Notes under the pieces: generated by a model
What the model was told of the DNA's origin: nothing
Seen by the model: only the letters and a program-made list of their open reading frames with translations
Databases searched by the model: none
Translations under genes and position numbers: made by a program
In this document: piece after piece, positions 5,350-26,858 of the stretch
How positions within the stretch are numbered: the first letter of the stretch is position 1
How the letters are laid out: each line of letters begins with the position of its first letter
Assembly (NCBI GenBank): GCA_002269645.1
Contig: NIVC01001551.1
Location: 1-64,000, forward strand
Source: Macrostomum lignano
Lineage: Eukaryota
DNA length: 64,000 nucleotides
Direction: 5' to 3'

Positions 5350-5358
5350 AATTAAGAG

Positions 5359-5412
<54 letters not shown>
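5350..5412. repeat. (GA)n microsatellite
   Basis: Direct reading. Confidence 0.95.
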
Positions 5413-5416
<4 letters not shown>

Positions 5417-5745: not shown

Positions 5746-5826
5746 TGATTGCTCGCAATCTTTCAAGCCAACTTCTCAATGGCTCATTTCTGCCACTCAG
5801 CAACTGAGCTGCTCACAGCCTCTCAC

Positions 5827-7477: not shown

Positions 7478-7478
7478 C

Positions 7479-7531
<53 letters not shown>

Positions 7532-7680
7532 CACAGACAGACACACACACACACACACACACAGACAGACACACACACAGACACACAGACACGCACACAG
7601 ACACACAGACAGACAGACAGACAGACAGACACACACACACACACACACACACAGACACACAGACACGCACACAGACACAC
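7478..7680. repeat. Compound (GACA)n/(CA)n microsatellite
   Basis: Direct reading. Confidence 0.95.
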
Positions 7681-8744: not shown

Positions 8745-9095
8745 GTAAAACTTCCCGTTGCTAAGCGTATCCAAGGCAAAACTTTCCGTTGCTAAGCGTA
8801 TCCAAGGTAAGAATTTCCGTTGCTAAGCGTATCCAAGGAAAAACTTTCCGTTGCTAAGCGTATCCAAGGTAAGACTTTCCGTTGCTAAGCGTATCCAAGG
8901 TAAGACTTTCCGTTGCTAAGCGTATCCAAGGTAAAACTTTCCGTTGCTAAGCGTATCCAAGGTAAAAATTCCCGTTGCTAAGCGTATCCAAGGTAAAACT
9001 TCCCGTTGCTAAGCGTATCCAAGGTAAAATTTCCCGTTGCTAAGCGTCTCTAAGGTAAAACTTCCGTTGCTAAGCGTCTCTAAGGTCCCGTTGCA
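8745..9095. repeat. 31-bp minisatellite (gttgctaagcgtatccaaggtaaaacttccc), about 11 copies, just 3' of the glycogen synthase stop
   Basis: Tandem copies with no unique spacers. Confidence 0.95.
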
Positions 9096-9189
9096 AATTT
9101 CAAACCAAGCAAAAAGATCCATGATTTATAAAAAACCGCCCTCTCTCTTTGAGTACTCCACAGAAGTCCTGCTCGCCGCTCAGCTCAGC

Positions 9190-9609
9190 TCAGTTGGACC
9201 GGGACGACAGCTCGGCCCGTTCGGCGTCCTCGTCGACTTCGTCTTCGCTGCTAACCGCGCCAGCCCCGGTGCCGGTGTCGCCCTCGTCGTCGCTGCCAGG
9301 ATTGCTGTGATGCGGAGTCGAGGCCCGGCTGCCCATCGGGCTGGCCACGGCCGACAGCGGCCGGCTCAGGATGATCGACGACGGGCCTTTGCCGGTGCCG
9401 ACTCCGGCGCCGCCGACCTCGCGGACTGAGTCCTTGAACAGGGCCGGGTGGGTGGCGGACACGGCCGCCAGTCTGGCTTTGCGATAATAGATGGCCAGAT
9501 TTTTCCAGTCGAGCAATTCGCTGAGCCGCTCGGTCCGATTGCGCAAAATGATGCGCTGGCGCCGGTTCAACTGGGTGAAGTCGAACATGAACTGGGCGAG
9601 CTGCTGCAC
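9190..9609 (-). CDS. GYS: Glycogen synthase exon 6 (last)
   Basis: ccgcag|VQQLAQFMFDF...RQRIILRNRTERLSELLDW...RPLSAVASPMGSRASTPHHSNPGSDDE...stop; conserved RQRI.RNRTERLS.LLDW and C-terminal phospho-cluster. Confidence 0.95.
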   Translation of the reverse strand: MQQLAQFMFDFTQLNRRQRIILRNRTERLSELLDWKNLAIYYRKARLAAVSATHPALFKDSVREVGGAGVGTGKGPSSIILSRPLSAVASPMGSRASTPHHSNPGSDDEGDTGTGAGAVSSEDEVDEDAERAELSSRSN

Positions 9610-9654
9610 CTGCGGACCGGAATGGGAGCGGCGATGGGTTGGATTATTGTGTGC

Positions 9655-9935
9655 AGATATGATTATCATGAGTCAGATATATGATTGTCATGAGTCAGAT
9701 ATATGATTATCATGAGTCAGATATATGATTGTCATGAGTCAGATATATGATTATCATGAGTCAGATATATGATTATCATGAGTCAGATATATGATTATCA
9801 TGAGTCAGATATATGATTATCATGAGTCAGATATATGATTATCATGAGTCAGATATATGATTATCATGAGTCAGATATATGATTATCATGAGTCAGATAT
9901 ATGATTTATTGAAGTCAGAAATATGATTTATTGAA
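9655..9935. repeat. 22-bp intronic minisatellite (atatgattatcatgagtcagat)
   Basis: About 12 copies in GYS intron 5. Confidence 0.95.
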
Positions 9936-9944
9936 GTGAGAATT

Positions 9945-10535
9945 TTGATTATCATGGAGGTGATGATCATGGGGTGATGATCATGGGGTGATGATCATGG
10001 GGGGTGATGATCATGGGGGTGATGATCATGGGGGTGATGATCATGGGGGTGATGATCATGGGGGTGATGATCATGGGGTGATGATCATGGGGGTTGATGA
10101 TCATGGGGGTTGATGATCATGGGGTGATGATCATGGAGGTGATGATCATGGGGTGATGATCATGGGGGTGATGATCATGGGGGGTGATGATCATGGGGGT
10201 GATGATCATGGGGGGTGATGATCATGGGGGTGATGATCATGGGGGTTGATGATCATGGGGGTTGATGATCACGGGGGTGATGATCATGGGGTGATGATCA
10301 TGGGGGTGATTATCATGGTGGTGATTATCATGGGGGTGATGATCATGGGGGTGATTATCATGGTGGTGATGATCATGGGGGTGATGATCATGGGGGTGAT
10401 GATCATGGGGGTGATGATCATGGGGGGTGATTATCATGGTGGTGATTATCATGGTGGTGATTATCATGGAGGCTGATTATCATGGTGGTGATTATCATGG
10501 AGGCTGATTATCATGGGGGTGATGATCATAGATAA
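9945..10535. repeat. 14-16-bp intronic minisatellite (tgatgatcatggggg)
   Basis: About 40 copies with variable G-run, GYS intron 5. Confidence 0.95.
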
Positions 10536-10613
10536 CCATGAAGGTGGACACGTGGATAGATAGACCCAGCCACTGACGATAATCATCATCATAAAAAATG
10601 ATGCAGCACTAAC

Positions 10614-11072
10614 AGACTCCTCCCCGGACCGGTAGCGCCTGTCAACCACGTAGATGCCATAGCTGGCCGGATCCTCGATGTGCTGCTCCATGAAGCAGCC
10701 GAAGCCGCTGAGGTTGGTGGACACAGACGGAATGCCCAGCACGGTGCACTCAGCCGGGGTGTAGCCCCACGGCTCGTAATAGGACGGGAACACGCCCAGG
10801 TGGCAGCCGCGCACAAACTCTTCGTAGTCCATGGGCAGCAGCGGATTGCTGGAGTTCAGAAACTCGGGATGGAACACCACTTTGACGCGGTCGGAGCGAT
10901 TGTTGAATAGCTGGCAACGGCGAAGGTCGGCTAGCACGGGGTCCTTGCTGTCGTCTATGACATTGTGCGTGCATATTGGCGGCAGGTGGGTGCGGTTTGT
11001 GCCATAGACGCAGCGCTTCAACTGGACAACGTCCTCTTGGCGAAGAATGTCCTTGCCTTCGGGTATGCGGCC
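10614..11072 (-). CDS. GYS: Glycogen synthase exon 5
   Basis: gtgcag|GRIPEG...[12 protein letters not shown]...[22 protein letters not shown]...EES|gttagt; catalytic EPWGYTPAE motif. Confidence 0.97.
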
Positions 11073-11214
11073 CTGCACGGGACGCGGCAGTTTTGTGGTA
11101 ATTGTATTCATTAGGGAGAGGCTGGAGAGCGGCCAGTAGGGCGGCTTGGGGCGGATATTTACGGAGGAAAGTAAGCGCGTGGCGGTTTTTGAGTTTGGGG
11201 CGGATTTTGGGGGC

Positions 11215-11995
11215 GGATATTGGGGGAGGATAGTGGGTGCAGGCGGATACTGGGGGAGGATAGTGGGTGCAGGCGGATACTGGGGGAGGATAGTGGGTGC
11301 AGGCGGATACTGGGGGAGGATAGTGGGTGCAGCCGGATACTGGGGGAGGATAGTGGGTGCAGGCGGATACTGGGGGAGGATAGTGGGTGCAGGCGGATAC
11401 TGGGGAGGATAGTGGGTGCAGCCGGATACTGGGGGAGGATAGTGGGTGCAGGCGGATACTGGGGAGAGGATAGTGGGTGCAGGCGGATACTGGGGGAGGA
11501 TAGTGGGTGCAGGCGGATACTGGGGGAGGATAGTGGGTGCAGGCGGATACTGGGCGAGGATAGTGGGTGCAGAAGGATACTGGGGGAGGATAGTGGGTGC
11601 AGCCGGATACTGGGGGAGGATAGTGGGTGCAGCCGGATACTGGGGGAGGATAGTGGGTGCAGGCGGATACTGGGGAGAGGATAGTGGGTGCAGGCGGATA
11701 CTGGGGGAGGATAGTGGGTGCAGGCGGATACTGGGGGAGGATAGTGGGTGCAGGCGGATACTGGGCGAGGATAGTGGGTGCAGCCGGATACTGGGCGAGG
11801 ATAGTGGGTGCAGCCGGATACTGGGGGAGGATAGTGGGTGCAGGCGGATACTGGGGGAGGATAGTGGGTGCAGCCGGATACTGGGGGAGGATAGTGGGTG
11901 CAGGCGGATACTGGGGGAGGATAGTGGGTACAGCCGGATACTGGGGGAGGATAGTGGGTGCAGGCGGATACTGGGGGAGGATAGTGGGTGCGGGG
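11215..11995. repeat. 30-bp intronic minisatellite (ggcggatactgggggaggatagtgggtgca)
   Basis: About 26 copies in GYS intron 4. Confidence 0.95.
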
Positions 11996-12077
11996 CGGGT
12001 GTTGAGCGCACGTCGGAGGAGGATGGGTGATGGCAAAAGTTCAGCACAGTTCACACAGACCCCAGCCAGCTGCTCAC

Positions 12078-12425
12078 CTGCAGGCACAGCTCGAACATCC
12101 TATTGCCAATATCCTGTTCAATCTGTTTGCAAGTGTCGCGCATGCCTTTCACAATGGCCTGTCCACGAAAAGATTCCACATTGAAGGAGGCGGTGCGCGC
12201 CGGGAAGATCAGGAAAGCAACCACGGTGACAGCGCTGTTGATCTCCTTCAGATAGAAGTTGAGCCGGGACAGGGCCTCGATGAACACATCGGCGCCCTTG
12301 TTTGAGTACTCGTAGCGGCCCGCGATGAAGAAGTAGAGCACTTTGTCCATGTCAAAATCGTAGTGGCCGTGAAAGTGGCCCTGGATAAACCTGTTGATCT
12401 TCTCCTTGGCCATCGCATGCCGGTT
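12078..12425 (-). CDS. GYS: Glycogen synthase exon 4
   Basis: taacag|[10 protein letters not shown]...[24 protein letters not shown]...FELCLQ|gtgagc. Confidence 0.97.
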
Positions 12426-12469
12426 CTGTTAAGGTTGGGGTATGGGGCAGGGCTATTTGAAGGTCAGCT

Positions 12470-13550
12470 GGATGGCGATTCTTATAAAGTCAAGGGCGAT
12501 TCTTCTAAAACCAAGGGCGATTCTTATAAAGTCAAGGGGCGATTCTTATAAAGTCAAGGGCGATTCTTATAAAGTCAAGGGGCGATTCTTATAAAGTCAA
12601 GGGCGATTCTTATAAAGCCAAGGGGCGATTCTTATAAAGTCAAGGGGCGATTCTTATAAGGTCAGCTGGAGGGCGATTCTTATAAGGTCAGGGGCGATTC
12701 TTATAAAGTCAAGGGCGATTCTTAGAAATCCAAAGGGCGATTCTTATAAAGTCAAGGGTGATTCTTAAAAATTCAAGGGGCGATTCTTATAAGGTCAGCT
12801 GGAGGGCGATTCTTATAAGGTCAGGGGCGATTCTTATAAAGTCAAGGGCGATTCTTAGAAATCCAAAGGGCGATTCTTATAAAGTCAAGGGTGATTCTTA
12901 AAAATTCAAGGGGCGATTCGTATAAGGTCAGCTGGAGGGCGATTCTTTTAAGGTCAGCTGGAGGGCGATTCTTATAAGGTCAGCTGGAGGGCGATTCTTA
13001 TAAGGTCAGGGGCGATTCTTATAAAGTCAAGGGCGATTCTTAGAAATCCAAAGGGCGATTCTTATAAAGTCAAGGGTGATTCTTAAAAATTCAAGGGGCG
13101 ATTCTTATAAGGTCAGGGGCGATTCTTATAAAGTCAAGGGCGATTCTTAAAAATTCAAGGGGCGATTCTTATAAGGTCAGGGGCGATTCTTATAAAGTCA
13201 AGGGTGATTTTTAAAAATTCAAGGGGCGATTCGTATAAGGTCAGCTGGAGGGCGATTCGTATAAGGTCAGCTGGAGGGCGATTCGTATAAGGTCAGCTGG
13301 AGGGCGATTCTTATAAGGTCAGGGGCGATTCTTATAAAGTCAAGGGCGATTCTTAGAAATCCAAAGGGCGATTCTTATAAAACAAAGGGCGATTCTTATT
13401 AACTCAAGGGGCGATTCTTATAAGGTCAGGGGCGATTCTTATAAAGTCAAAGGTGATTCTTAAAAATTCAAGGGGCGATTCGTATAAGGTCAGCTGGAGG
13501 GCGATTCGTATAAGGTCAGCTGGAGGGCGATTCGTATAAGGTCAGCTGAA
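12470..13550. repeat. Intronic minisatellite, 23-27-bp variants (ggcgattcttataaggtcagctggag / ggcgattcttataaagtcaag)
   Basis: About 45 copies in GYS intron 3, several unit variants recurring in blocks. Confidence 0.95.
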
Positions 13551-13578
13551 GGACAATTTTGAGACACCGGACGCGCAC

Positions 13579-14070
13579 CTGGAACTCGTGCAGAGCGGCA
13601 AACTTGACCACATTCAGACCGTTAGGCGTGATAACATCTGGAACCCGTTTCAACAGAAACTGGCTCTCCAGGCCAGTGATCTCGGATACGGTGGTGAACA
13701 CGTGGCTGCAGTGCACCGCCGCCCGTTCGATGCAATATCGATGATAAATATTGCGGTCCCCGGCCTCCTTGTCGATATTGAATTTGTCCAAATTGTTATA
13801 GAAGTCCACGTGACCGGCGCACAGGTAGCGGCCAAGTAGGGTGGCGTGCGTGGTGAACACGGTGGACACTGGCAGGCGGCGGCACCTGGCCAAGATGAGG
13901 CCGACTCCAGTCAGCCATTCGTGGAAGTGAGCTGTAATGGGCACAGAGGCCGGGTCATCGCCCAGGTTGGCCAGCTGGCTGCGGAACTCGCCGAGAAACC
14001 AGGCGACTAGAGCGCCAAAAATGATGGCGTCGTTTGACTCGCGATCGTGATAGGGTATGCCGATGTGCGC
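13579..14070 (-). CDS. GYS: Glycogen synthase exon 3
   Basis: ccgcag|[19 protein letters not shown]...[12 protein letters not shown]...[15 protein letters not shown]...TVSEITG...[17 protein letters not shown]|gtgcgc. Confidence 0.97.
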
Positions 14071-14704
14071 CTGCGGGGGTAGGTCGCGTGAGTTCTGGGT
14101 GATAGGGTATGCCGATGTGCGCCTGCGGGGGGTCGCGTGAGTTCTGGGTGATAGGGTATGCCGATGTGCGCCTGCGGGGGGGGAGTCGCGTGAGTTCTGG
14201 GTGATAGGGTATGCCGATGTGCGCCTGCGGGGGTCGCGTGAGTTCTGGGTGATAGGGTATGCCGATGTGCGCCTGCGGGGGTCGCGTGAGTTCTGGGTGA
14301 TAGGGTATGCCGATGTGCGCCTGCGGGGGGGGTCGCGTGAGTTCTGGGTGATAGGGTATGCCGATGTGCGCCTGCGGGGGGTCGCGTGAGTTCTGGGTGA
14401 TAGGGTATGCCGATGTGCGCCTGCGGGGGGTCGCGTGAGTTCTGGGTGATAGGGTATGCCGATGTGCGCCTGCGGGGGGTCGCGTGAGTTCTGGGTGATA
14501 GGGTATGCCGATGTGCGCCTGCGGGGGTCGCGTGAGTTCTGGGTGATAGGGTATGCCGATGTGCGCCTGCGGGGGGTCGCGTGAGTTCTGGGTGATAGGG
14601 TATGCCGATGTGCGCCTGCGGGGGGGGGGGGTCGCGTGAGTTCTGGGTGATAGGGTATGCCGATGTGCGCCTGCGTGGGGGGGGGGTGGTCGCGTGAGTT
14701 CTGG
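14047..14704 (-). repeat. 48-55-bp minisatellite, 13 copies, each a branch-like ctcac + poly-C + CAG + the first 24 nt of GYS exon 3
   Basis: Minus-strand unit ccagaactcacgcgaccccccgcag|GCGCACATCGGCATACCCTATCAC; the last copy is the real exon start. Confidence 0.95.
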
Positions 14705-15513
14705 CTTTACTTATATTGTTTGAAATGCGCATCATCGGATTGCCTAGAGTTAGAGTTAAGCAGAGTTAATCGCGGTTAGTACGAAACTAAATCGGGCTGT
14801 TTAAGTCACCATAATACCCCTTTCATAGCTACCCTTAATAGACACTGCTATCACATCTCTAGCTTCGCTTAAATAGACACTGCATAATAACAGTCTGATC
14901 TGGTATTGCAAAATATCTAATGCGCCCGCTCTCTCTTCAAGGGCCATGGCTCTCGCGTAAACTCTCTTAGCTTAATCTTCCAGTTAGCACTTTGGTTTCG
15001 TTAGCTTTGTTGCACCTGCAAATGGTTTGCTTTTTAGACAGATTCTATATAGATAAGGTGCGGCACTGGCTGTTTATAGAGGTGAAAATAGATAACAGAG
15101 AACAAGCATGAAAGGCTAGAAAAGACACAAGGAACAGCTAAAATTATACTTTAAAAAATACGAAATAAAAAAGGATAGCAAACGGTGCCTAGACCAAGAA
15201 GCATCCCAGAGACAATTCCATCGCCCCAGAGTCGTAAATCGACGAGATGTCGCTAAAAAGTTGTCAAAAAAATTGCCTATAGGGGGTGCTTCTATAATGA
15301 CACTGGGGCCGCATGAGTCGTATCTGAGGCGTGCTAAAGTCGCTGTAAAATCACCGAGTTGCGCCTAAGGCACATCTGCGTCACTTTATTTCGCGACTCG
15401 TTGTTTGGTGACCACTAACAAGAAAAGACTGGTTCGGTTCCGTGAGCAAACGCACTCATTTGGAGCTTGTATACAAAAAAATCGGCAGGGGTTGTCATAG
15501 TAGTAGACATAGT

Positions 15514-15577
15514 ACTAATTAGATGACGAGGCATTTACCCTTAATAAGAAAGTTATAGTTGCTCCTGCCATTTACCC
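15514..15577 (-). rRNA. Degenerate 28S rRNA fragment (helix 69-71 region); not a functional gene
   Basis: actaattagatgacgaggcattt...aagaaagttatagttgctcctgccatttaccc aligns to the antisense of conserved LSU GGGTAAACGGCGGGAGTAACTATGACTCTCTTAAGGTAGCCAAATGCCTCGTCATCTAATTAGT. Confidence 0.8.
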
Positions 15578-15960
15578 AAAATTGCGTTAATTTTTTTCTT
15601 TAGGGTTTCTTTCTGTGTTGGATTTGGAGTGCCTGCGTACCGACCTTCTGCTATGTGTAGCGTCGCCAGTGTACACTTGGCGGTCCCCGTCTCAGAGGTG
15701 TTGGGGTGGGGTTGATGCGCGTGAGGCGTTGATGAGCCAGAGAGTTGGAGTGAGAAGATCGATTTGATTTAATATATAAGCAATAATTTAGCCACAGGGC
15801 TCATTTACCCGTTTTTTTGTTAAAGTCTAACCCTCAGATTTATTAGACTTGATTATTTCTTTAACACTTTCAGAGGTAAGTCGCATTTTTGGTGTAAAAC
15901 AGGGGGGGGGGTTGTGCATGTAGGAATGGTGCCACTTAGCTAGAAAATGTACAGACAGAC

Positions 15961-16250
15961 CTTCTCCCACAGCTCGTGCTTGAATTCGTCCAGACGATGC
16001 GCGCTGGTGCCAACGTCGAACAGCACAACATTTGGATAGCCTTCGATAAGCCAGCGCCCGGTGACCACTTTGCAGCCGGCGGATCTCATTGCTTGAACAG
16101 TTCGTTGAAGCGCTTCGTTGCTAGGCTCGCCATACTCCAGCTCGGTTCGGCAGCAGTGCTCATTATATGGACCCAAAAGTACATAGTGATCTTTTAGTTC
16201 GTCAACAGAGACGCCAGCTTTGGTGCGGATTACAGTGTAGATTCCGCCAA
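15961..16250 (-). CDS. GYS: Glycogen synthase exon 2
   Basis: tgacag|(V)GGIYTVIRTKA...LLGPY...GRWLIEGYPNVVLFDVG...ELWEK|gtctgt. Confidence 0.97.
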
Positions 16251-17224
16251 CTGTCAGATTGGGGCACAGTGAGCTATTTAGACGACGAGGCACTTCAGCA
16301 TATAGATACTCCCGCCATTTACTCACAATAGGACATTAATTATATTATTATAGTTTTAGGTGAAATATACTAATAGGTATAAACCCTTAAAGCATTTTTA
16401 GATTTTGCGAATAGCATTGTAGCAATGTAAAATATTTAATAGAGTATTCAGAAACCACTGCATTTTTTATAAACTAAAACTAGTCAAAACAAAAAGCAAA
16501 ATAGTCATTCAGCTGCAATAGCAGTGTGTACCAACACGTTATAAACCATTCCTGGCCAGATCTGTAAAATTGGCCATCTTTGAACAAAAAATCACATGAT
16601 CCCTGTTTTGACTCATTATCATTGGAGAACTTTTCTGTTGGTTAAAGCAAAGGGCTAACTAGCATGAAATCAAAAGACAACAAATCCCAATGACATCCCA
16701 ATGACAAAATAGATGGTTATATATATGTACATAAGGAATTAGATATATAATTCCTTATTTATATTTCTGATGATTTTAAAACTATTTTTGTAAAAAGTTT
16801 TTTGCCTTTAAATCTTAATATACATTATATCTGCTACCAAGCAAACAATTTCTATCTATATTGCTAAATCCTTAACCCCAAGGAGTAAAGAACTCTTTAA
16901 AAGAATGGCACATGAAAAAATAAAGAAATAAATAGGAAAATAAATTGTTTATTAATAACAAAAATAAGAACTGACGATAATGGCATAGTAATATATGCTG
17001 ATTATTATACTTGTTATAATAACTTACTATAACTGTACCAACTGTGCCAAAAAGGATATTTCCATTTTATAATGTAACTGTTTAGTTTAGCCATTTAGGC
17101 CTCTCCTTGGCCAATGTATTATATAGAATATAGATTTATAACAAAGCTAAAGAGTTTTGTGAACCTTGCTTTGCATAGTGAGCTTCTATTTGTAGTGTTT
17201 ATTGATTTTATTATTTACAAGTAT

Positions 17225-17390
17225 AATAATAGTTAGATACTAGCAATCTAGTGCCCTACTTTGAGGCATGCAATAAGCAAGGAGCAAAAATTATTCATTG
17301 AAAGCAATTAAAAAAGCACATTTTCTTTAAAAAACAATTCCTTCTTCAGTTTTATAAATCAACTTATTTTAGTAAAATTGTCATGGACAA
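17225..17390. repeat. Left arm of an inverted repeat pair (partner 24590-24750)
   Basis: Reverse complement aligns to 24590-24750 (shared atttttgctccttgcttattg, cactagattgc); roughly 80% similar by eye. Confidence 0.75.
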
Positions 17391-17489
17391 TGTTTGCTAT
17401 GAATCTTTTTTAAAAATTAACAGAAAGAACAAAATATAGTTCTCACAAAGATAATAGACATTCCACCTAAATATAAAACATCCCCAAGA

Positions 17490-17740
17490 TAGCAAGCAAA
17501 CATCCCCCTAGATAACAAGCATCTACCCAGATAGTAAGCATCCACCCAGATAGCAAGAATCCTTGGATAGAAAGAATCCCATACATGTAGATACATATAG
17601 CCAGTACCCTTCTCTCCTAAATAGCAAGTACCCCCTCCCCATCAAGAGGAAGCATCCACCAATAGTAAGCACCCCCCCCCAATACAATAGTAAGCACCCC
17701 CTTCCCAGATACAATAGCAAGCATCCATCAGACAGCAAGT
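17490..17740. repeat. Degenerate about 20-bp tandem repeat (cagatagcaagcatccaccc-like)
   Basis: Recurring agata(g/c)/agcaagca/ccc motifs. Confidence 0.55.
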
Positions 17741-17929
17741 AGCTGGTGCAAATATTTCCTCTGCTAATGCAATAATTGCTTTCTCAAGTTGTGCATTAAT
17801 CCATGTCTCATCTAGCACAATAATCTCTTTTTATTCTAGCGCAAAAATCCAATTCTTAGCTTGTGCAATAATCCTTTACTCATAAAGTGCAAAATTGATG
17901 TCTCCACTAGTGCATTAGTCTATTTCTAA

Positions 17930-18411
17930 GCTAGTGCAATATTCCTTAGTTTATCAAATGCAATAATCCATGGCTTTTCAAATACAATAATCCTTGGTTT
18001 ATCAAGTACAATAATCCTTGGTCTATCAAGTGCAATAATCCTTGGTTTATCAAGTGCAATAATCATTGGCTTATCAAGCACAAAAATCCTTGGCTTATCA
18101 AGTGCAATAATCATTGGCTAATCAAGTGCAATAATCCTTGGTTCATCAAGCAAAATAATTCTTGGTTTATCAAGTGCAATAATCCTTGGTTTATAAAGTG
18201 CAGTAATCCTTGGCTTATCAAGTGCAATAATCCTTGGCTTATTAAGTGCAATAATCCTTGGTTTATCAAGTGTAGCAATCCTTGGCTTATCAAGTGCAAT
18301 AATCTTTGGTTTATCAAGTGCAAGAACCCTTGGTCTATCAAGTGCAATATCATTGGCTAGTCAAGTGCAATAATCATTGCCTAATCAAGTGCAGTAATCC
18401 TTGGTTTTTCA
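17930..18411. repeat. 24-bp minisatellite (tatcaagtgcaataatccttggct), left part; resumes at 24252-24470
   Basis: Same unit on both sides of the hAT insertion. Confidence 0.93.
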
Positions 18412-19385
18412 TAGTGATGGATCCGAATATTCGGATTCGGAATCCGAATCCGAAAAAAAGTCTTACTTTTATAGGAATCCGAATGTTTCGGATTCGGAAA
18501 TTTTTTTTTCTGAATATTTCCGAATGTGCTTCTAAAATTCAAATCTAAAATAAATATTACAAATCAAGAAACCAAAGCATGCAACCCGTTAAATAAAGAA
18601 ACTAAAAACTAAAAATAAAGAAAATTAAAAGGCAAAGAGCAAAATCTATCACGTTATTCTTTTTTTCTACGATTGTCTATTTTTGCAGCAATAGCTGCAA
18701 TATATGTTTTAAAAAGTTAAATAAGTAAATTTACTAAACCTAGGGACCTGTAAGACAATAAACCTAAAGTTACGGAAATATTTTGGTAATTATTGTTTAA
18801 GTGTAATAACAGGTTTTTTCAAAATGCAAAATTGCAACTGCATGGGTCACATGGACTGTACGTACGTACGGTAAAATTATCATAATTGCACTGTATATAT
18901 GTCACTCATTAGCAATAGTCAGTAGTACTAGAATTAGATGTTCATGTAACACGGTAGAAGTAGAACTGAATTTCCTATCTAAGTCCATCTCTTTAAATTT
19001 GGTTTCGCGATAGATGTCAGTAGAGGTTGGACAAGCAGAAGATGGTCATGCGTGAATTTTTCAAAGTCAGGCGTGATCGTGATCGTGAATTTATATTAGC
19101 ATACATGTATATTGAGCTCGTAAGTTACAAGTGTTGAAAATAACAAACAAGAAAAGAAATCATACTTGTATATTGATAATAGCTACTCGGCCGTAATGCT
19201 GTCAAGTCAACAAATTTAAAATTTATTAATTCTTTACACATTCGTGTTCACATTTTTTGGTAAATCAAGTAGAAAAGTTATATTTCTAATAAAAACGTAA
19301 GCAGAAATTCACAACCGTTGGAACAGGTTTCAACAAAATCACTATCGTGAAAAAATGGTCCTGAATTCACGATTGTGATCACATC

Positions 19386-20726
19386 TATGAGCTGCATAGA
19401 ATGCAGTCATATTTGCAAAGGACGGCTGCACCTAAAACTTGCTGCGTAATTTGCATTTTGTTCTATGTAGCCTATAAGAGTTTACGTTCCCATGCGCATG
19501 TTCTGCTGTGTTTTAAATAAAAGGAGAGACAGTAGTGAAGGCGCTCGCTTCACTTTCCTCTCGCCCGCATCAGCGGGCCTAAAGGCATGGCCATTGCCTC
19601 GACTGGGCTGTAGGCCGCAGCAGCCTGGGCCCAGAAATACCGTGCTTCGAGTTCAATTCTTTGTTGTCCGACGTGAGCAGAAGGTGCAGGCAGGATGGAC
19701 ACAAAATCCTACCTGTTACAATGGTTCCCTGACCGCGTGAGTCTGCTAGACGAAGTTCCTGTCACGAAGGATAACAGAGGGTTGAATAGAAGCCGGTTGA
19801 AGGACAGCACAACATCAGCAGATCGAGATCCGGCGACCAGAGGACATCTTGCGTCGTTGGCGTGCTTGACGGCATTAAGTCGCAACGGTGGTTCAGTTCA
19901 ACTGCCACCACGGTGCAGCCGCCGCCCCAACTGACGCGTGTTCAACAGCCGTTCGGATGGATCGACAAGAAGAGAGTCAGCCCCAGCGTCACTGTCTCGG
20001 CGACTGGCATGCAGATCAAGTTTCCTGCCCTGAGAGGCGATGCGTCTCAAAAGTGGAGCAGTGTTTCGGCCCAAAGGCCAAGAGTCGCCTCCCCACAGCA
20101 AGAAGACTGTGAGGGAAATTTGCGATGCATCCGGCAGGAAGACCGGAGCACGATCTGTGCATGCAAGGGACATGCCAGTGAAGCTACTTAAGATAGCTCA
20201 CGAGGACTGCATGCTCGTTTCCGAGGTGGCGGACTTCAAGGTTGACCCCCTTAGAGCAGCGCGAATTGAAGAATGGTAGCGACCCGGCTGGAGGAGTCCG
20301 ACATTGCTATAGCTCATTGCTGGTGTATTCAAGCGCGTTTCAAATTTCAACTATACTTTGAGGTGTCGAAGTTTTTTCAACCATGGAGGGATATGAGCTG
20401 CATAGAATGCAGTCATATTTGCGAAGGACGGCTGCACCTAAAACTTGCTGCGTAATTTGCATTTTGTTCTATGTAGCCTATAAGAGTTTACGTTCCCACA
20501 CGCATGTTCTGCTGTGTTTTAAATAAAAGGAGAGACAGTAGTGGAGGCGCTCGCTTCACTTTCCTCTCGCCCGCATCAGCGGGCCTAAAGGCATGGCCAT
20601 TGCCTCGGCTGGGCTGTAGGCCGCAGCAGCCTGGGCCCAGAAATACTGTGCTTCGAGTTCAATTCTTTGTTGTCCGACGTGAGCAGAAGGTGCAGGCAGG
20701 ATGGACACAAAATCCTACTTGTTACA
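19386..20726 (+). mobile_element. Internally deleted LTR retrotransposon A (LTRs 19386-19720 and 20392-20726)
   Basis: 335-bp direct repeats ending tgttaca, about 7 transitions apart; PBS tggttccctgaccg (19722-19735) complementary to the tRNA-Glu 3' end; short PPT ggaggga; only a pol-tail-like remnant inside; no clean TSD. Confidence 0.9.
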
Positions 20727-21143
20727 ATGATATGAGCCATAAGAAAATGCTCATAAGTCTAGGAACGGGGATAGGCTAGGTCACCTGGTCGTGTCACCTG
20801 GTCGAGTCACCTGGCGAGGCTGGACGGCAACGAGAGGACCCAATGTGAGCCTGGAGCGAGGGGACCAAAGTTATGAAGTAGGCCCCAACGTTGCGCCCCA
20901 ATTAAAATTATCATCATTCATCATTGATTAAAAAGGCCAAATTTAATGTGATCAAAGATCAAATGATTTTTATATACTTTTCATATATTATAATATCTTA
21001 CAGACCGCACCTAAACCGCACCTACTTTTTTAATTTCAGGGTGCAATTTTAAAATTTAGGGTGCATACGCACACTCTGCGCACAAAAAAAACCCTGGAGC
21101 AAACACAACAATAGCGCCAAGACAAACCCTACGAATCTGGCCA

Positions 21144-21806
21144 ATGATTCTGATGGGACTGCTCATTTTTGCCGGAAGTTTCTGCGAAATCGAAGCGATG
21201 CACACGCAATATGTGGACAGTCCAAAATTTTGCACCGACATTAGAGCCCCCATAGCAATTCGGCTGCCGGAACAACAGGACTGCAAAATTCCAAAGGAAG
21301 GACAAGATGGACGGATAAAGCTTAAATTAACTTTACACCATGAGAACGCCGAGACACATAAAAGTGTCATGAAGATATGCCACAGAGAAGACTACAATTT
21401 CACAGCGCAACTGTACAAAATCGCAGGAAAAACAGTATTCGTGTACTTGACAGTAGCAATTAAGCTACAAACAGTCACAGTGGAACAATGTAACTCGTGG
21501 AATGCAGGAGCTACAACAGAAGATGGAACATTGGAAGAAGACCTCAAAGTGGATGGTTGCATCAGCCGATACTCTACGAAAAAATGGGTTCGAAATGACC
21601 TAGATAATCTGGCTAAGACCGGAGAGAAATTAGAAATAACAGTCAGCACTGTGTTGACGAATGTACCATTCTACGTTTCGGGAAATGGAATGAACTCGTT
21701 GTATGTGCCAGTAGACAAATGCAAATACAAGGAGAGCAAGTGCCAACGGGACGAGAAAGCGGCAAATTTTAAAATATGGCCACTAGAATGCACTTTACCA
21801 GAATGA
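21144..21806 (+). pseudogene. env-like viral glycoprotein ectodomain fragment
   Basis: Signal-like MILMGLLIFAG, Cys pattern C..P / C / C.SW...TTEDGTL / CKYKESKC...IW...C, NFT glycosylation site; reads on past a stop as LWSVTNFYDREY. Family assignment is by eye only. Confidence 0.55.
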
Positions 21807-21959
21807 CTTTGGTCAGTGACAAACTTCTACGACAGAGAATATTGAGTGCGAGGTTCAAGACTGTACCAGATGGTATGGACAGTGCATGAACATTACCAAT
21901 GCCAGTACTAGAAAGGACGACAACTGGTCGGATACATGCACACGGACTGGTTTCAATCG

Positions 21960-22498
21960 GAAGATATGACATATGTGCTAACCTTTCAGAGACCAGTAAA
22001 ACTGAATGCATCATGTGCAGAAGACAAGTATACTTTATACAAGGCGGAAGCTCTAAGATTAGCTCGAGAAATCGCCAGACACAATCTACAGCAAGCACAA
22101 AAGCGAACGCACAAACAAGCCAACAAGGGGCGACAGCAAACGACTCTACAAGTAGGTGACAGAGTCATGCTACAAGAACCACTAAGAACTGCAAAACATC
22201 AACCACGATTTTTGGACCGTATAGAGTGATTCGGAAATTCAACGAAACGAATGTAGCCATCCGATCGGAAGACAATAACAAAGAACCAATGCTGGTACAC
22301 GTCGACAGATTAAAAAAGATGCAGAACCCGGAGGAATCTGTTTTCTTGCCCGATTTCCAACCGATGGACCCTAGAAGAATGGCACTACAGCAGAGGAAGC
22401 CGCTATATAGAACAATTGGCACGCAAGTCTTGGATGAACTGGAAGAGCATCCCGCTCATGCATACAACTTGCGGAGCAGGGACAAAATCCAACACTAA
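21960..22498 (+). pseudogene. Gypsy integrase C-terminal region (GPY/F module), frameshifted
   Basis: LAREIARHNLQQAQKR...LQVGDRVML...PRF / GPYRVIRK...LVHVDRLKK...AYNLRSR across two frames. Confidence 0.85.
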
Positions 22499-24054
22499 CA
22501 GCAACAGGAGGGTAGAGGGATAGTTCAGAATGGACTATCCATGGCGACGGACTTACCACCAAGCGAATTAGCAGACGAAAATGTACATGTATGAGGACGA
22601 GTTTGATTACGAGACCTACCATGGAGAAGATCTACGACGCTATCAATATTTTGAGATGAACTACGAGTATTACTGTCCGCCAAATGGGATTATCAAGCAA
22701 GTTGAGTTAAGTCATAAAGAGACATCAAACTATTGAATAACAATGACACAAAACGCCTGCAGTAGAAAACAGTTTAGAAAGACAAAGTTATTACACGTGA
22801 AGCAAAGTTATAGTATAAATGCCCATTCCACGTGCAAGTACCTTTAAGTGGGATTGCCTGGTCTCGACTAACACTGCGATCGAAGCGAGACAGTTTGCCT
22901 GACTAAGGGTATAGTTAGTAGAACCCTTGTGTGTCGTGTGACTGAACTTAGGCAGTAGTAAGGCACTAGGCCTTTAGATTAGCGGTGGGACATAGGCGTG
23001 AAAAGTGGACGCCAAGACGACAGCCCTAGCAAGAAAATCAACACTATCGCGAAGGAGCATAACTCAAATCAAATGACGTGATGAGGATATCCAGCACTGA
23101 TCAAGACGCCATCATTTTCAGACCAGGAGTGGTCTGCGTTTCAACAAGGGGCGGATATGAGCCATAAGAAAATGCTCATAAGTCTAGGAACGGGGATAGG
23201 CTAGGTCACCTGGTCGTGTCACCTGGTCGAGTCACCTGGCGAGGCTGGACGGCAACGAGAGGACCCAATGTGAGCCTGGAGCGAGGGGACCAAAGTTATG
23301 AAGTAGGCCCCAACGTTGCGGACGCTAGCCTTTGTCTAAGACACCCAACGTAGCTCGGCTCGCACCATCAGCAGCAGCAGCATCAACGATCTCAGCAGTA
23401 TGCAACAATCAGCCGATCGGCTCAGGACAGCAAGACCAGTTCAGCAGGAGTTCATTGTGCTTCCCAACGCTCAATTGTTTGCACGAGTGAAAGTTAGAAA
23501 AGTTTAGCCGGCTGAAATTGGCTTGCACTAAGAACATCTGAACGTCTGGCTCTCACGAAAACTGCTGAGATCAGCGCCCAAAATTGCGACATCGATACAG
23601 CTGCAACACTGGTGGAGCCGCCGAATGACGCACAACGGCGCTGTCCGATTTCGCTGTTCACATGAAACTGGCACGCAGGCATCCAAACTTTCGCACCAAA
23701 AAAAATAATTCCCAGACTTTCTTGCAATTGCGTTGATCTAGAACTCTTTTGCTACAATTGCTATTGGTTTGAAATAACGCTGACTGAGGCAAATTTTGTT
23801 GTATAAATATAAGTGCGGAAAAGTAGAAATGGGCCAACTTGCGAGCGAGCAAACTGGCTGCCTAACAACTATCGTTCGAACAAAAACTTGTGTTCTAAAC
23901 TTTCGATTGAACAGTAAAGCCAGTAAAGTTGAAAGGCTAATTGAAATCAAAAGGAGGCGCAAGCAAACATATTTAGCCGCTTAACTCGACAGGCGCGTAA
24001 CCTCCTATAACATCCGACCTTTAAGATAAAAGTACGAGTACGAATATAAGCCCA

Positions 24055-24155
24055 GGAGAGATGGAATCTTGTCAGTCAATTTATGTGCGCACTAATTAGA
24101 TGACAAGACATTTTCATAAATTTAAAGAGTCATAGTTACTCCCGCCGTTTACCTT
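24055..24155 (-). rRNA. Second degenerate 28S rRNA fragment (helix 69-71 region); not a functional gene
   Basis: agagtcatagttactcccgccgtttacc (24126-24153) matches conserved LSU antisense; similarity continues through actaattagatgac to ggaatct. Confidence 0.88.
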
Positions 24156-24251
24156 GCACTTTTTGCTTATATTCGGAAACATTCGGATTTTTTTTGTACA
24201 TTCAGATTCGGTTTCGGAAACTTGCAAAAATCCACATTCGGTCCATCACTA

Positions 24252-24470
24252 GTTTATCAAGTGCAATAATTCTTGGTTTATAAAGTGCAGTAATCATTGG
24301 CTTATCAAGTGCAATAATCATTGGATCATCAAGTGCAGTAATCCTTGGCTTATCAAGTACCTGGTACAATAATCCTTAGCTTATCAAGTGCAATAATCAT
24401 TGGCTTATCAAGTGCAATAATCCTTGGTTTATCAAGTGCAATAATACTTGGTTTATCAAGGGCCATAATC
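24252..24470. repeat. 24-bp minisatellite, right part
   Basis: Same unit as 17930-18411. Confidence 0.93.
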
Positions 24471-24589
24471 CAGGTCTTTTTAATTAGTCCTTTAATAAAA
24501 ACTTTCAATTAAAAAAAATATACTACTTTCATTTACACTACTAAGATTTGAACCTAGGTTGCTGTATTAGTAGTCTAGTGTGTTCATAT

Positions 24590-24750
24590 TATATGACAAT
24601 TTTACACGAATAAGGTGATTTTTAAAAGTGAAGGAATTGGTTCTTAAGAAAATATGCTTTTTTAATTTTTTTCTATGAACTATTTTTGCTCCTTGCTTAT
24701 TGGACACCCTGAAGGGGGCCACACTAGATTGCTTAGATTGCTAGTTTATA
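24590..24750. repeat. Right arm of inverted repeat pair (partner 17225-17390)
   Basis: See left arm. Confidence 0.75.
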
Positions 24751-25179
24751 CCCTGAAATTTAGATTTGCACCCACTTTTTGGCACTAGATGCAACTTGTG
24801 CATCTGCATTTTTTTAAATCAAGATGCATGCAAATCATTTTTTAGCAAAAGTTACAAACAAAACATCATGTATAAATATATTGTTTCAATACTTTTCTGA
24901 AACTTCATTGAAAACTTTCTCTAAATTTAGACCTAGATGCAAGTTGCATCCTGGTTTTCATATTTGCATTTATTTTTTAAGCTTAAGATGCAAGCTTACA
25001 TCCATATTTTATCTTTTTATTTCATTCAAAACTTATTTTAAATTATTATTAGTTTCAAACAAAATTAATTTTATCTTTGATATAAATATATTAAGTATAA
25101 CCTATAAAATAATAAATAAGTAAATAATTTTTTAGCAAACTATGACAATTATTTCAGCCATTTATTAAAATGGCCTAGC

Positions 25180-25683
25180 CCCCCACTCCCGAATCTTACA
25201 TATACGCCGGAAAATTCCGGCGTACAGTAGACCTGAAAATATGCTTGGTGTATAACATCCGGCGTAACACAACAGCTATGCCAATTGTGCGCCACTGCGC
25301 CGGCATATTGGTGTCTAGCGTAGATGTCTGGCGTGGCAGTAGACGTATAAAATGAGGTATTCGCCTATTGTATGTTCAATTGACATACAAAAAACATTTA
25401 AAAATGTTTTTACAAACAAAATGTTAAAACAAAATACAAAACAAAAAACACTATACCATAGTTACTATTTATTTATTCCTAGATTTTTGTGTTTATTAAA
25501 GTAAAAGGTAATTTTACTCAAAAAGAAAAGGGACCTAAAATTTGAATTTCAATTTGGCATAACGTTGCAATTTTGTTGCGGCGTACATATCATGTACAAA
25601 ATTTTTTTCTGGCGAAAACTTAAATTTATGGCGTAAAGGGTCATTTTTTCTGGCGTACCATATAACAGATTCGAGAGTGTGGG
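25180..25683. mobile_element. MITE with CCC...GGG ends
   Basis: cccccactcccgaatct vs reverse complement cccacactctcgaatct; cctagc on both flanks; internal tacgccgg/ggcgta motifs. Confidence 0.65.
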
Positions 25684-25711
25684 CCTAGCCTAAAAATATA
25701 AAATTAAAAGC

Positions 25712-25983
25712 AATGGCTAGAGTTCCAGCACCAGAACCCATTTTCTAATGGCTATAGATTCTAGTAGTGCAGTTTATGGGTACAATATAGCAGAAACATT
25801 TACTTTTTAACAGGTGGTTGATATTGGGATTTTGTTCAAGATAATAGATAAGATCAAAATGAAATGATGATATTCAAAATAAGATACTTCTAATGTTCAG
25901 ACTTTATCAGATAACTGCCTGCAGAAGACTGCCAGATCTATAGCCATTAGAGAACAGGTTCTGGTGCTGGAACTTTAGCCATT
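25712..25983. mobile_element. 272-bp MITE with about 48-bp TIRs
   Basis: aatggctagagttccagcaccagaaccc...ggctatagat and its reverse complement; no clear TSD. Confidence 0.75.
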
Positions 25984-26087
25984 ACCAAAATTAAAATTTA
26001 TAAGTGGCAGTCATTTAAAATGGCAATCTTTTACTTTATTGCATTTAATTATTTTTCACTTTTTTTCTCATTTCAGCCAACTTACTA

Positions 26088-26530
26088 ATGGCTAGAAGGC
26101 CTTTTGCGCCCACTACGATTGTGCCCAAGGCCAATCTAAGGCCAGCAGCCAAGCTATGCGACATTGATGTCAAGCTACATGAGCTTGTGCTGTTGACATC
26201 TAACAGCCAGCAAACTATTCACTGGCTGGCCACTTACGGGCTACTGCGAAATTCTTGGGCATATGAACGATGCCTTGAGGCTCCAGCCATGCGGCTACAG
26301 AGGCGGGATGGAGCCCAATTTGTTGATGGCTATGCCTGGGCATGTCCGACCTGCAGGATGCAGAAAAGCATCATAAAGGGCAGCTTTTTTGAGGGCACCC
26401 ACCTCATCATCACCTAGCTAGTGGATTTGGTATACCACTGGATGCATGGCATGCTGCTTCACTAAGTTGAATGGGAGTGTCACATCTTGAGCAGGACTGC
26501 CACGGACTGGTTCAACTTCTTCAACCATTA
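26088..26530 (+). pseudogene. Merlin (IS1016/ISXO2-like) transposase N-terminal fragment
   Basis: C..APAMRL...DGYAWACPTCR..KSIIKGSFFEGTHL then, past stops, LVDLVYHW...TATDWFNF; in-frame stops and truncation. Confidence 0.75.
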
Positions 26531-26692
26531 AAAAAATTAAATGCAGTAAAGTAAAAGATTGCCTTTAAAACAATATATTATTTTAAATTAATTTTCTTCT
26601 TAAAGCTAGCTAGCTTTTTTAATGATCTATTAGTATCATTCCAGGCATAGCAATGTCATGAATGAAAAAGTTAGGTTGTTACTTGTAATTAC

Positions 26693-26858
26693 CTTTGTTT
26701 ACAACTTCCCATGCAACTTCAAAAACCCATCTTTTCTGGTAGTTTTGGAGGGCATCATTTCCTTCCAAGTAAAAAAGCTCAAATTCTGTATCATTTTCCG
26801 ATGTCAGACGAAACATTGAAGATCGTCTCTTCAACCCAACTCCAGAACTAAACGCCAT
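26693..26858 (-). CDS. GYS: Glycogen synthase exon 1 (first coding)
   Basis: ATG GCG TTT: MAFSSGVGLKRRSSMFRL...RWVFEVAWEVVNK G|gtaatt; joins exon 2 to give the FEVAWEV.NKVGGIY signature. Below the ORF-track cutoff. Confidence 0.93.

What the first reader, a model, noticed from the sequence alone, without database searches (positions are those of the whole stretch)
14047..14704. Minisatellite made of an entire 3' splice site plus 8 codons of the exon: 13 tandem acceptors
Seen: each sense-strand unit is ccagaactcacgcgac(c)ncgcag|GCGCACATCGGCATACCCTATCAC, i.e. branch-like CTCAC, a pyrimidine run, CAG and AHIGIPYH of exon 3. Unit lengths counted from the exon: 52, 49, 53, 48, 48, 51, 49, 49, 49, 48, 49, 55. 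The unit has no stop in any frame. The last acceptor (14070) gives normal GS, while the first (14670, +600 nt) and the ninth (+399 nt) are also in frame and would insert 200 or 133 Pro/His/Arg/Thr-rich residues after ELWEK; the other ten frameshift. Known: scanning favours the first AG after a branch point, and tandem duplication across splice junctions is a proposed route to intron growth and gain. Inference: either a mechanism selects the 13th of 13 near-identical acceptors, or poly-C length acts as a mutable dial between functional, extended and NMD isoforms. Caveat: homopolymer lengths are error-prone in long-read assemblies.
Basis: partly seen in the sequence, partly recalled or inferred. 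Interest (0 to 1): 0.82.

Follow-up and report, generated by a model that had tools for sequence, protein, structure and literature searches.

The report
Minisatellite copying a splice acceptor ("mirage")
A 49-base stretch spanning the end of an intron and the first eight codons of the next exon of a glycogen synthase gene has been copied 13 times head to tail; this kind of boundary-spanning repeat is already known from amphioxus as a "mirage", and in this repeat-saturated region it is probably a young, mostly harmless by-product, not a regulatory device.

Summary
There are 13 complete units on the minus strand (14704-14047, 658 nt). Each carries CTCAC, a C-run, CAG and the first 24 nt of exon 3 of an animal glycogen synthase. 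Acceptors 1 (+600 nt) and 5 (+399 nt) are in frame, and the array has no stop codon and no GT.

This is a known kind of object, a "mirage": a minisatellite that duplicates an exon-intron boundary. Mirages are described in amphioxus Adh3, globin, troponin C and PGBD5 genes, where RT-PCR showed normal splicing. The human F7 intron-7 VNTR is the mirror image at a donor site.

The setting makes it unsurprising. Minisatellites make up 24% of the window and 60-97% of seven of the ten examined introns, ending 9-124 nt from the splice sites.

Only the last acceptor gives an uninterrupted 724-aa synthase. Nothing suggests selection on the extra acceptors: unit lengths are not multiples of three, and 2 of 12 are in frame where 4 are expected by chance.

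The "mutable dial" idea has no support. Which acceptors are actually used cannot be settled without transcripts, and none were found.

The parts
14047..14704 (-). The array: 13 complete tandem units of 48-58 nt. Each unit is the intron 3' end (CCAGAACTCACGCGA + C-run + GCAG) followed by the first 24 nt of exon 3 (GCGCACATCGGCATACCCTATCAC).
14047..14098 (-). Unit 13, the authentic copy. Its C-run variant is CCTACCCCC, its acceptor AG is at 14072-14071, and its exon part (14070-14047) continues into the rest of exon 3. It is the only copy that yields an uninterrupted glycogen synthase.
14647..14704 (-). Unit 1, the most upstream decoy. Its C-run segment is CCACCCCCCCCCCAC, and the first base after its AG is 14670 (+600 nt, in frame, open). 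It is contiguous with unique intron sequence upstream (...AAGTAAAG|CCAGAAC).
14469..14517 (-). Unit 5. It holds the second in-frame decoy acceptor; the first base after its AG is 14469 (+399 nt).
14094..14121 (-). The joint of units 12 and 13 (exon-like part of unit 12, 14122-14099, then the start of unit 13). It carries the extra AG created at every unit joint (CACCCAG|AACTCAC). The first base after this one is 14094 (+24 nt, in frame). It is one of 12 such joint AGs.
14071..15960 (-). Intron 2 of the glycogen synthase gene (1890 nt, phase 0, GT...AG). Its last 634 nt are the array. Its position (K|A after ELWEK) is not shared with the bivalve, stingray, nematode or choanoflagellate genes.
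15961..16250 (-). Exon 2 (VGGIYTV...HELWEK), followed by donor AAG|GTCTGT.
13579..14070 (-). Exon 3 ([14 protein letters not shown]...ALHEFQ), followed by donor CAG|GTGCGC.
9190..26858 (-). The whole glycogen synthase gene. Its six coding exons are 26858-26693, 16250-15961, 14070-13579, 12425-12078, 11072-10614 and 9609-9190. The ORF is 2175 nt and encodes 724 aa.

Best explanation
This is a 'mirage' minisatellite. A roughly 49-bp segment straddling the intron-2/exon-3 junction of a glycogen synthase gene (25 nt of intron with a branch-like CTCAC, a C-tract and CAG, plus 24 nt of exon) was duplicated in tandem and amplified to 13 copies. The likely agents are the slippage and unequal-exchange processes that have filled almost every intron in this GC-rich, minisatellite-saturated region.

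Such a duplication is tolerated because the 3'-most copy stays contiguous with the exon, and the 12 extra copies simply lengthen the intron by 600 nt.

Shown here: the anatomy; the local abundance of arrays ending close to splice sites; the fact that only the last acceptor gives an intact enzyme; the near-identity of the units, which points to a young or homogenised array; and the absence of any sign of selection on the decoys.

Inferred: productive mRNA is made mainly through the last acceptor. The reason would be that only this acceptor is followed by real exon sequence (exon-bound factors favour the nearest acceptor, i.e. exon definition and proximity). In addition, seven of the twelve decoys have a short CTCAC-to-exon spacing of 15-16 nt, against 19 nt for the authentic copy. 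Occasional use of decoys would mostly give frameshifted transcripts with a stop in exon 3, upstream of three more introns, and therefore open to nonsense-mediated decay. C-run length differences are slippage or sequencing noise, not a regulatory dial.
For: Anatomy.

Only acceptor 13 gives a 724-aa ORF that matches Pfam Glycogen_syn at 1068 bits over profile positions 1-636 of 639.

Context: 33 minisatellite arrays cover 24% of the window. Seven of the ten examined introns (three in glycogen synthase, four in the neighbouring cadherin gene) are 60-97% array, and array edges lie 9-124 nt from the splice sites. Other acceptors of the gene are also C-rich ...CCGCAG|G.

No selection on decoys: 2 of 12 are in frame (4 expected), unit lengths are not multiples of 3, and the insert has no family match.

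The insertion point lies at the end of helix 80-98, before the conserved loop HIGIPYHD, in a part of the model with pLDDT about 96.

The unit occurs nowhere else in the window.

Base substitutions occur only in units 1, 11 and 13. That is roughly the edge-versus-core pattern of concerted evolution reported for amphioxus mirages.

Precedent: amphioxus mirages at Adh3, globin BflGb6/9, TnC and PGBD5 do not disturb splicing. In human F7 the identical pseudo-donors of a boundary-spanning VNTR stay silent.
Against: No transcript, second haplotype or related species could be found. The splicing outcome is therefore inferred, not shown.

All 12 decoys are intact. Decoys 1 and 2 have longer C-tracts and 22-25 nt branch spacing, so they could be as good as or better than the authentic site.

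First-AG scanning and 5'-to-3' order of synthesis would favour upstream copies. The classic experiments with duplicated splice sites gave contradictory results.

The array RNA is less structured than shuffled controls (z = +4.4), so nothing masks the decoys.

The precedent comes from another phylum: the window is probably spiralian, not a cephalochordate.
Confidence: 0.7

Rival explanations
1. Decoy acceptors are used at a substantial level. The array would then lower glycogen synthase output through frameshifted, decay-prone mRNAs and/or make enzymes with a 133- or 200-residue Pro/Arg/Thr/His-rich insert. C-run slippage would change the mix.
For: The acceptors are identical in their core. Acceptors 1 and 5 are in frame and open, and the array has no stops and no GT. 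No RNA structure hides the decoys. C-rich tracts can be genuine, factor-dependent acceptor elements (PMC4797308). Scanning and first-come rules favour upstream sites.
Against: In-frame decoys are not enriched and unit lengths ignore the reading frame. The insert would split a conserved, confidently folded segment and has no family match. Mirages studied by RT-PCR gave no aberrant mRNAs. A dial needs heritable tuning under selection, and nothing here indicates that. The C-run lengths themselves are uncertain.
Confidence: 0.15
2. Assembly artefact. The copy number, or the whole array, is wrong, or the C-run lengths are mis-called. In either case the frame arithmetic is meaningless.
For: All variation between units is homopolymer length, the classic long-read error. 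Ebner et al. note that the BflGb6 mirage was aberrantly assembled in the amphioxus draft genome.
Against: The unit boundaries are clean and join unique sequence on both sides. There are three non-homopolymer variants (A, T and TA interruptions). Thirty-two other arrays of similar size are assembled in the same window. An artefact would not create a boundary-spanning unit from nothing. Wrong C-run lengths are quite possible (my guess is about 0.4), but that does not remove the array.
Confidence: 0.07
3. The first acceptor (14670) is the constitutive one, and the 600 nt are a real coding insertion in this species' glycogen synthase.
For: +600 is in frame and open. It is the first AG with a full acceptor context that follows the unique part of the intron.
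Against: In-frame status has a 1-in-3 prior. Units shift frame relative to each other, so the 'repeat protein' is not a repeat at protein level. There is no homolog with an insert here among 28 aligned synthases. The position is at a helix end next to a conserved loop.
Confidence: 0.04
4. The array is a selected intronic element, for example a binding platform for poly-C-binding proteins that sets the splicing efficiency of intron 2, and not a neutral by-product.
For: There are thirteen C-tracts at regular spacing. Poly-C-binding proteins act on C-rich acceptor tracts in mammals.
Against: The units are nearly identical, which suggests a young array. Neighbouring introns carry unrelated arrays of every sequence type, which points to a mutational process and not to a sequence-specific function.
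Confidence: 0.04

Closest known systems
Amphioxus 'mirages': minisatellite tandem duplications of exon-intron boundaries (Adh3, Canestro et al. 2002 NAR 30:2871, cited but not held; globins BflGb6/BflGb9, PMC3087553; troponin C and PGBD5, PMC3902484)
   Same: The tandem repeat unit contains both intron and exon sequence together with the splice signal. BflGb6 is the same case (3' end of the intron plus 5' part of the exon). The authentic copy sits at the array edge next to the exon body. Inner units are homogenised and edge units diverge. The host genome is rich in intronic minisatellites.
   Different: This array has more copies (13, against 3-6 in BflGb6) and a shorter unit (49 bp, against 150-160; Adh3 units are 10-72 bp). 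Every copy keeps an intact acceptor. The host is apparently not a cephalochordate: there is no glycogen synthase above 65-72% identity in the database, and the nearest locus is a bivalve's. The intron sits at a lineage-specific position. Splicing was not tested here.
Human F7 intron 7 37-bp VNTR whose first unit spans the exon 7 donor (PMC1557585)
   Same: A minisatellite spans a splice junction, so several splice sites of identical sequence compete for one partner. Some pseudo-sites would keep the reading frame. No masking structure was found.
   Different: It is on the donor side, not the acceptor side. The authentic site is the first of the series, consistent with 5'-to-3' scanning, whereas here the productive site is the last. 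It has 5-9 copies and has been characterised experimentally.
Intron gain or modification by tandem duplication (Rogers model; potato RdRp, PMC4974935; human internal tandem repeats at exon-intron boundaries, PMC2812944)
   Same: Tandem duplication involves splice signals and changes intron length or gene structure.
   Different: No new intron is created here. The unit has no GT, so no copy can act as a donor. The effect is only to lengthen an existing intron.
NAGNAG and other close tandem acceptors
   Same: More than one usable AG lies at the end of one intron.
   Different: NAGNAG sites share one branch point and pyrimidine tract and lie 3 nt apart. Here each acceptor has its own branch-like motif and tract, and they lie 48-55 nt apart.

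Membership tests
Mirage (boundary-spanning minisatellite) | Head-to-tail minisatellite array (unit of tens of bp, several copies) | tested here: met
   13 units of 48-58 nt. TRF period 49, score 1105.
Mirage (boundary-spanning minisatellite) | The unit contains both intronic and exonic sequence, including the splice signal | tested here: met
   The unit holds 24-34 nt of intron ending in CAG plus 24 nt that encode AHIGIPYH of glycogen synthase exon 3.
Mirage (boundary-spanning minisatellite) | One edge copy is the authentic junction, contiguous with the rest of the exon | tested here: met
   Unit 13 continues into [11 protein letters not shown].... Only this copy gives a full-length PF05693 match.
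Mirage (boundary-spanning minisatellite) | Concerted evolution: inner units homogenised, edge units diverged | tested here: inconclusive
   Base substitutions are found only in units 1, 11 and 13, and everything else is identical apart from C-run length. This fits the pattern, but there are too few differences for a test.
Mirage (boundary-spanning minisatellite) | Regular splicing is not disturbed (RT-PCR shows only the normal junction) | not testable with these tools
   No transcripts or close relatives were found.
Mirage (boundary-spanning minisatellite) | Copy number is unstable between haplotypes or individuals | not testable with these tools
   Only one haplotype is available.
Rogers-type intron gain by tandem duplication | The duplicated segment supplies both a GT donor and an AG acceptor, so that a new intron is spliced out | tested here: not met
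   There is no GT anywhere on the sense strand of the array.
Recursive splice site | An AG|GT(A/G)AGT junction that regenerates a donor after the first splice | tested here: not met
   The junctions read CAG|GCGCAC. The exon 2/decoy joint AAG|GCGCAC is not a donor.
Tandem cassette or mutually exclusive exons | Each repeat has an acceptor and a donor flanking an exon-sized segment | tested here: not met
   There are no donors in the array, and the 'exon' part is 24 nt.
Animal/fungal glycogen synthase (Pfam PF05693, GT3) | Full-length match above the curated cut-off, with invariant residues kept | tested here: met
   1068 bits against a cut-off of 27, covering profile positions 1-636 of 639. E = 7e-112 to human GYS1 structure 8cvx. 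Invariant columns are shared with 27 homologs.

The most novel reading that the evidence does not exclude
In this lineage, minisatellite amplification at splice junctions could be a working route of gene-structure change. The lineage has lost four ancestral glycogen synthase introns, carries two at positions not seen in the bivalve, stingray, nematode or choanoflagellate genes, and its introns are mostly minisatellite. On this reading the array supplies in-frame upstream acceptors (+24, +399, +600 nt and others) that are used at measurable levels. That would give length-polymorphic enzyme isoforms or a shifting intron boundary, and the minisatellite-filled, novel-position introns nearby would be products of the same process.
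Probability: 0.1. Interest if true: 0.6.

Novelty: new member of a known kind. Interest (0 to 1): 0.3.

Why it matters
If the array is real and only the thirteenth acceptor is used, it is a clean natural test case for how a spliceosome chooses among near-identical 3' splice sites. It would be the acceptor-side counterpart of the well-studied F7 donor VNTR, and it would show that 'mirages' are not confined to cephalochordates.

It also flags a genome region where introns consist almost entirely of minisatellites, in a gene with lineage-specific intron positions. That bears on how introns grow and move.

It does not by itself reveal a new mechanism.

Tried and rejected
1. Looking for the same gene in the same or a related species, or for a transcript across the junction. 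The protein search with exons 2+3 gave nothing above 65% identity. Two exact DNA scans of metagenome contigs gave 0 hits. A search with the neighbouring cadherin gave at best 31% identity. Species and splice usage therefore remain unknown.

2. Rfam scan of the whole window: no match.

3. RNA structure that could hide the decoys: rejected. The array folds worse than shuffled controls (z = +4.4).

4. Transposon or dispersed-repeat origin of the unit: rejected. The unit occurs only in the array.

5. Intron gain by duplication, recursive splicing, tandem cassette exons: rejected, because the array has no GT.

6. Coding function of the 200-residue insert: no family match, and the frame changes from unit to unit.

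7. Amphioxus origin: unlikely. Annotated Branchiostoma proteomes are public (my own knowledge, not tested here), so a Branchiostoma origin should have given a close hit, and none appeared. In addition, four ancestral introns are missing.

8. The original mirage paper (PMC117041) is not held in the library. It is cited only through PMC3087553.

9. Branch-point reasoning from CTCAC spacing is inference only. I could not derive a reliable branch consensus from the few acceptors in the window.

Full report
OBSERVATION

The minus strand of 14704-14047 is a perfect head-to-tail array of 13 complete units (658 nt). Each unit reads CCAGAACTCACGCGA + C-run + GCAG | GCGCACATCGGCATACCCTATCAC. TRF reports period 49, 12.7 copies, 94% matches and score 1105.

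The distances between successive acceptors are 55, 49, 48, 49, 49, 49, 51, 48, 48, 53, 49 and 52 nt, 600 nt in all. All differences between units lie in the C-run segment (15, 12, 6, 5, 6, 6, 6, 8, 5, 5, 10, 6 and 9 nt). The other 43 positions are identical in all 13 copies. The only base substitutions are A interruptions in unit 1, a T in unit 11 and TA in unit 13.

The sense strand of the array has no stop codon in any frame and no GT. Acceptor 1 (first exon base 14670, +600 nt) and acceptor 5 (14469, +399 nt) are in frame and open. The other ten shift the frame and meet a stop inside exon 3.

Each unit joint makes a further AG in a good pyrimidine context (ATACCCTATCACCCAG|AAC). That gives twelve more candidate acceptors, seven of them in frame, including one only 24 nt upstream of the real one.

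THE GENE

A tblastn search with human GYS1 (sequence written from memory, used only as a probe) and a search of 5.8 billion proteins identify an animal-type glycogen synthase on the minus strand. The N-terminal exon was found with homolog N-termini.

With the last acceptor, the six coding exons are 26858-26693, 16250-15961, 14070-13579, 12425-12078, 11072-10614 and 9609-9190. They join into one 2175-nt ORF of 724 residues. This protein matches Pfam Glycogen_syn at 1068 bits over profile positions 1-636 of 639 and human GYS1 structures at E = 7e-112. The gene is therefore intact, and only acceptor 13 gives an uninterrupted enzyme.

The exon 2/3 junction (ELWEK|AHIG) corresponds to human T136|C137. 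In an AlphaFold model of exons 2+3 (pLDDT 88) it lies at the C-terminal end of helix 80-98, immediately before the conserved loop HIGIPYHD, where local confidence is about 96.

CONTEXT

The window is saturated with minisatellites. There are 33 arrays with period of at least 10, covering 24% of the 64 kb, or 27% with microsatellites.

All ten introns I could delimit carry at least one array, and seven of them are mostly array:

| Gene | Intron | Length | Share that is array | Unique flanks (donor/acceptor side) |
|---|---|---|---|---|
| Glycogen synthase | 3 | 1153 nt | 88% | 86 / 48 nt |
| Glycogen synthase | 4 | 1005 nt | 79% | 84 / 124 nt |
| Glycogen synthase | 5 | 1004 nt | 85% | 84 / 47 nt |
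| Cadherin | A | 592 nt | 91% | 33 / 22 nt |
| Cadherin | C | 995 nt | 97% | 18 / 9 nt |
| Cadherin | D | 239 nt | 60% | 34 / 61 nt |
| Cadherin | E | 685 nt | 76% | 106 / 55 nt |

The remaining three are glycogen synthase intron 1 (10.4 kb, with small arrays and a retroelement), glycogen synthase intron 2 (the intron of this finding, about one third array) and cadherin intron B (three arrays; its acceptor was not located exactly).

In cadherin intron C the last repeat unit runs to within 9 nt of the AG, so the branch site of that intron must lie inside a repeat unit. An array that overshoots an acceptor by 24 nt is therefore the tail of a local distribution, not a singular event.

The other acceptors of the glycogen synthase gene are also C-rich (...CCCGTGCAG|G...GGTCCGCAG|G...CCCCAACCTTAACAG|A). 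A poly-C tract is thus normal for this organism.

WHAT IT IS

The literature search turned up the exact kind. Ebner et al. [quoted passage not shown] The term comes from the Adh3 locus (Canestro et al. 2002, not held in the library). Further cases are troponin C and PGBD5 (PMC3902484).

[quoted passage not shown] They also report that inner units are homogenised while edge units diverge. The substitutions seen here only in units 1, 11 and 13 roughly fit that pattern.

The mirror image in man is the 37-bp VNTR of F7 intron 7. Its first unit spans the exon 7 donor. The 5-9 identical pseudo-donors are functional when tested but normally silent, and frame-preserving ones are not preferred (PMC1557585).

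The present array meets the structural criteria of a mirage. The two behavioural criteria, normal splicing and copy-number instability, cannot be tested here.

HOW IT PROBABLY WORKS

Shown:
- A duplication across an acceptor leaves one copy contiguous with the exon and places the others in the intron, so the coding sequence is not interrupted.
- The units are almost identical, so the array is young or is being homogenised, and the decoys have not had time to decay.
- There is no sign of selection on the decoys. Two of twelve are in frame, where four are expected by chance. Unit lengths (48-55 nt) ignore the triplet frame, so the hypothetical insert runs through all three frames of the unit. 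The 200-residue peptide matches no family.

Inferred:
- Productive mRNA uses acceptor 13, because only this one is followed by real exon sequence beyond the shared 24 nt. Exon-bound factors and the downstream donor would favour the nearest acceptor (exon definition and proximity; established knowledge, not tested here).
- Seven of the twelve decoys have only 15-16 nt between the A of CTCAC and the exon, against 19 nt for the authentic copy.
- Leaky use of decoys would mostly give a stop codon in exon 3, upstream of three further introns, so these transcripts would be open to nonsense-mediated decay.

Points against this inference:
- Decoys 1, 2, 8 and 11 have spacings of 18-25 nt and long C-tracts.
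- The array RNA is less structured than shuffled sequence (z = +4.4), so nothing masks them.
- First-AG scanning and 5'-to-3' synthesis favour upstream sites.
- The old experiments with duplicated splice sites gave contradictory answers.

I therefore put 0.7 on the main explanation and 0.15 on substantial decoy use.

THE 'DIAL'

Nothing in the sequence supports a tuned switch. It would need C-run lengths under selection. Ebner et al. also note that one amphioxus mirage was mis-assembled in the draft genome.

INTRON HISTORY (beyond the finding)

I fetched the glycogen synthase loci of a bivalve (Tegillarca, L001), a stingray (L002), a nematode (L003) and a choanoflagellate (L004) and mapped exons by tblastn.

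- The bivalve and the stingray share introns at query residues 62, 125, 193 and 241. The window gene has none of these.
- It shares only the intron before VGGIY.
- Its intron 2 (K97|A98) and intron 3 (after HEFQ) are absent from all four genes. The nematode has an intron four codons upstream (HE|LWEK), and the choanoflagellate has one just before the ELWEK equivalent.

The array therefore sits in an intron at a lineage-specific position, in a lineage with strong intron turnover. This keeps alive, at low probability, the idea put forward for amphioxus globins that mirages take part in remodelling intron boundaries.

SPECIES

The species was not identified. No glycogen synthase is more than about 65% identical in the protein database. 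The bivalve locus is the closest (about 72%, against about 65% for the stingray). The best named cadherin hit is from the flatworm Macrostomum, at 31%. This suggests a spiralian and argues against amphioxus. If that holds, mirages occur outside cephalochordates.

VERDICT

The array is real and was accurately described, but it belongs to a known kind, it is unsurprising in this setting, and there is no evidence for the proposed regulatory role. It is a good natural substrate for a splice-site choice experiment.

Interest 0.3; novelty: new member of a known kind.

Noticed in passing
window 1-16000 and 44000-64000; introns listed in the report: Minisatellites make up 24% of the window (33 arrays). 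Seven of the ten delimited introns (three in glycogen synthase, four in the cadherin gene) are 60-97% minisatellite, and unique flanks are only 9-124 nt. Each intron carries an unrelated repeat unit.
   Followed up: partly
window 55127-56121 (+), cadherin intron C: A 23-bp x 42 array (AATCTCCCCTGATCCCAAACCCG) fills 97% of the intron and ends 9 nt before the acceptor AG. The branch site and pyrimidine tract of this intron must therefore be repeat units, making it a near-mirage without the AG.
   Followed up: partly
window 9190-26858 (-), glycogen synthase gene versus L001-L004: Intron turnover. Four introns shared by a bivalve and a stingray are absent. Introns 2 (K|A after ELWEK) and 3 (after HEFQ) are at positions not found in the bivalve, stingray, nematode or choanoflagellate genes.
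   Followed up: partly
window 9190-26858 (-): There is a steep third-codon-position GC gradient along one gene: 0.35, 0.57, 0.73, 0.77, 0.80 and 0.84 for exons 1 to 6. A composition break near 16 kb coincides with the minisatellite-dense part. This could mark a recombination or biased-gene-conversion hotspot.
   Followed up: no
window 56758-56996 (+), cadherin intron D: An apparent GC-AG intron (donor TTTCAG|GCGAGC) of 239 nt. It holds a 28-bp x 5 array whose units each contain three AGs.
   Followed up: no
window 20729-23320 (+), inside glycogen synthase intron 1: Two 167-nt direct repeats, 100% identical (20729-20895 and 23154-23320), flank ORFs with a weak match to the C-terminal domain of integrase. 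This is probably a young LTR retroelement. A separate 300-nt direct repeat, 98% identical, lies at 19386 and 20392.
   Followed up: partly
window 50372-59000 (+): A protocadherin-like gene (signal peptide, cadherin repeats, transmembrane segment) whose extracellular region is split by minisatellite-filled introns. The array at 58387-59018 lies in an open frame continuous with the cytoplasmic exon, so it may be coding.
   Followed up: no
window 8745-9086: A 31-bp x 11 array starts about 100 nt downstream of the glycogen synthase stop codon, probably inside the 3' UTR.
   Followed up: no
window 49612-50093 and 63666-64000: Very long, almost perfect tetranucleotide runs: (ATCT)x120 at 100% matches, and (AGTT)x84 running off the end of the window.
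   Followed up: no
window 62243-62740 (-): Exons of a sodium/calcium exchanger family gene (Pfam Na_Ca_ex, 63.7 bits). Next to them is a 24-bp x 10 array at 63136-63372.
   Followed up: no
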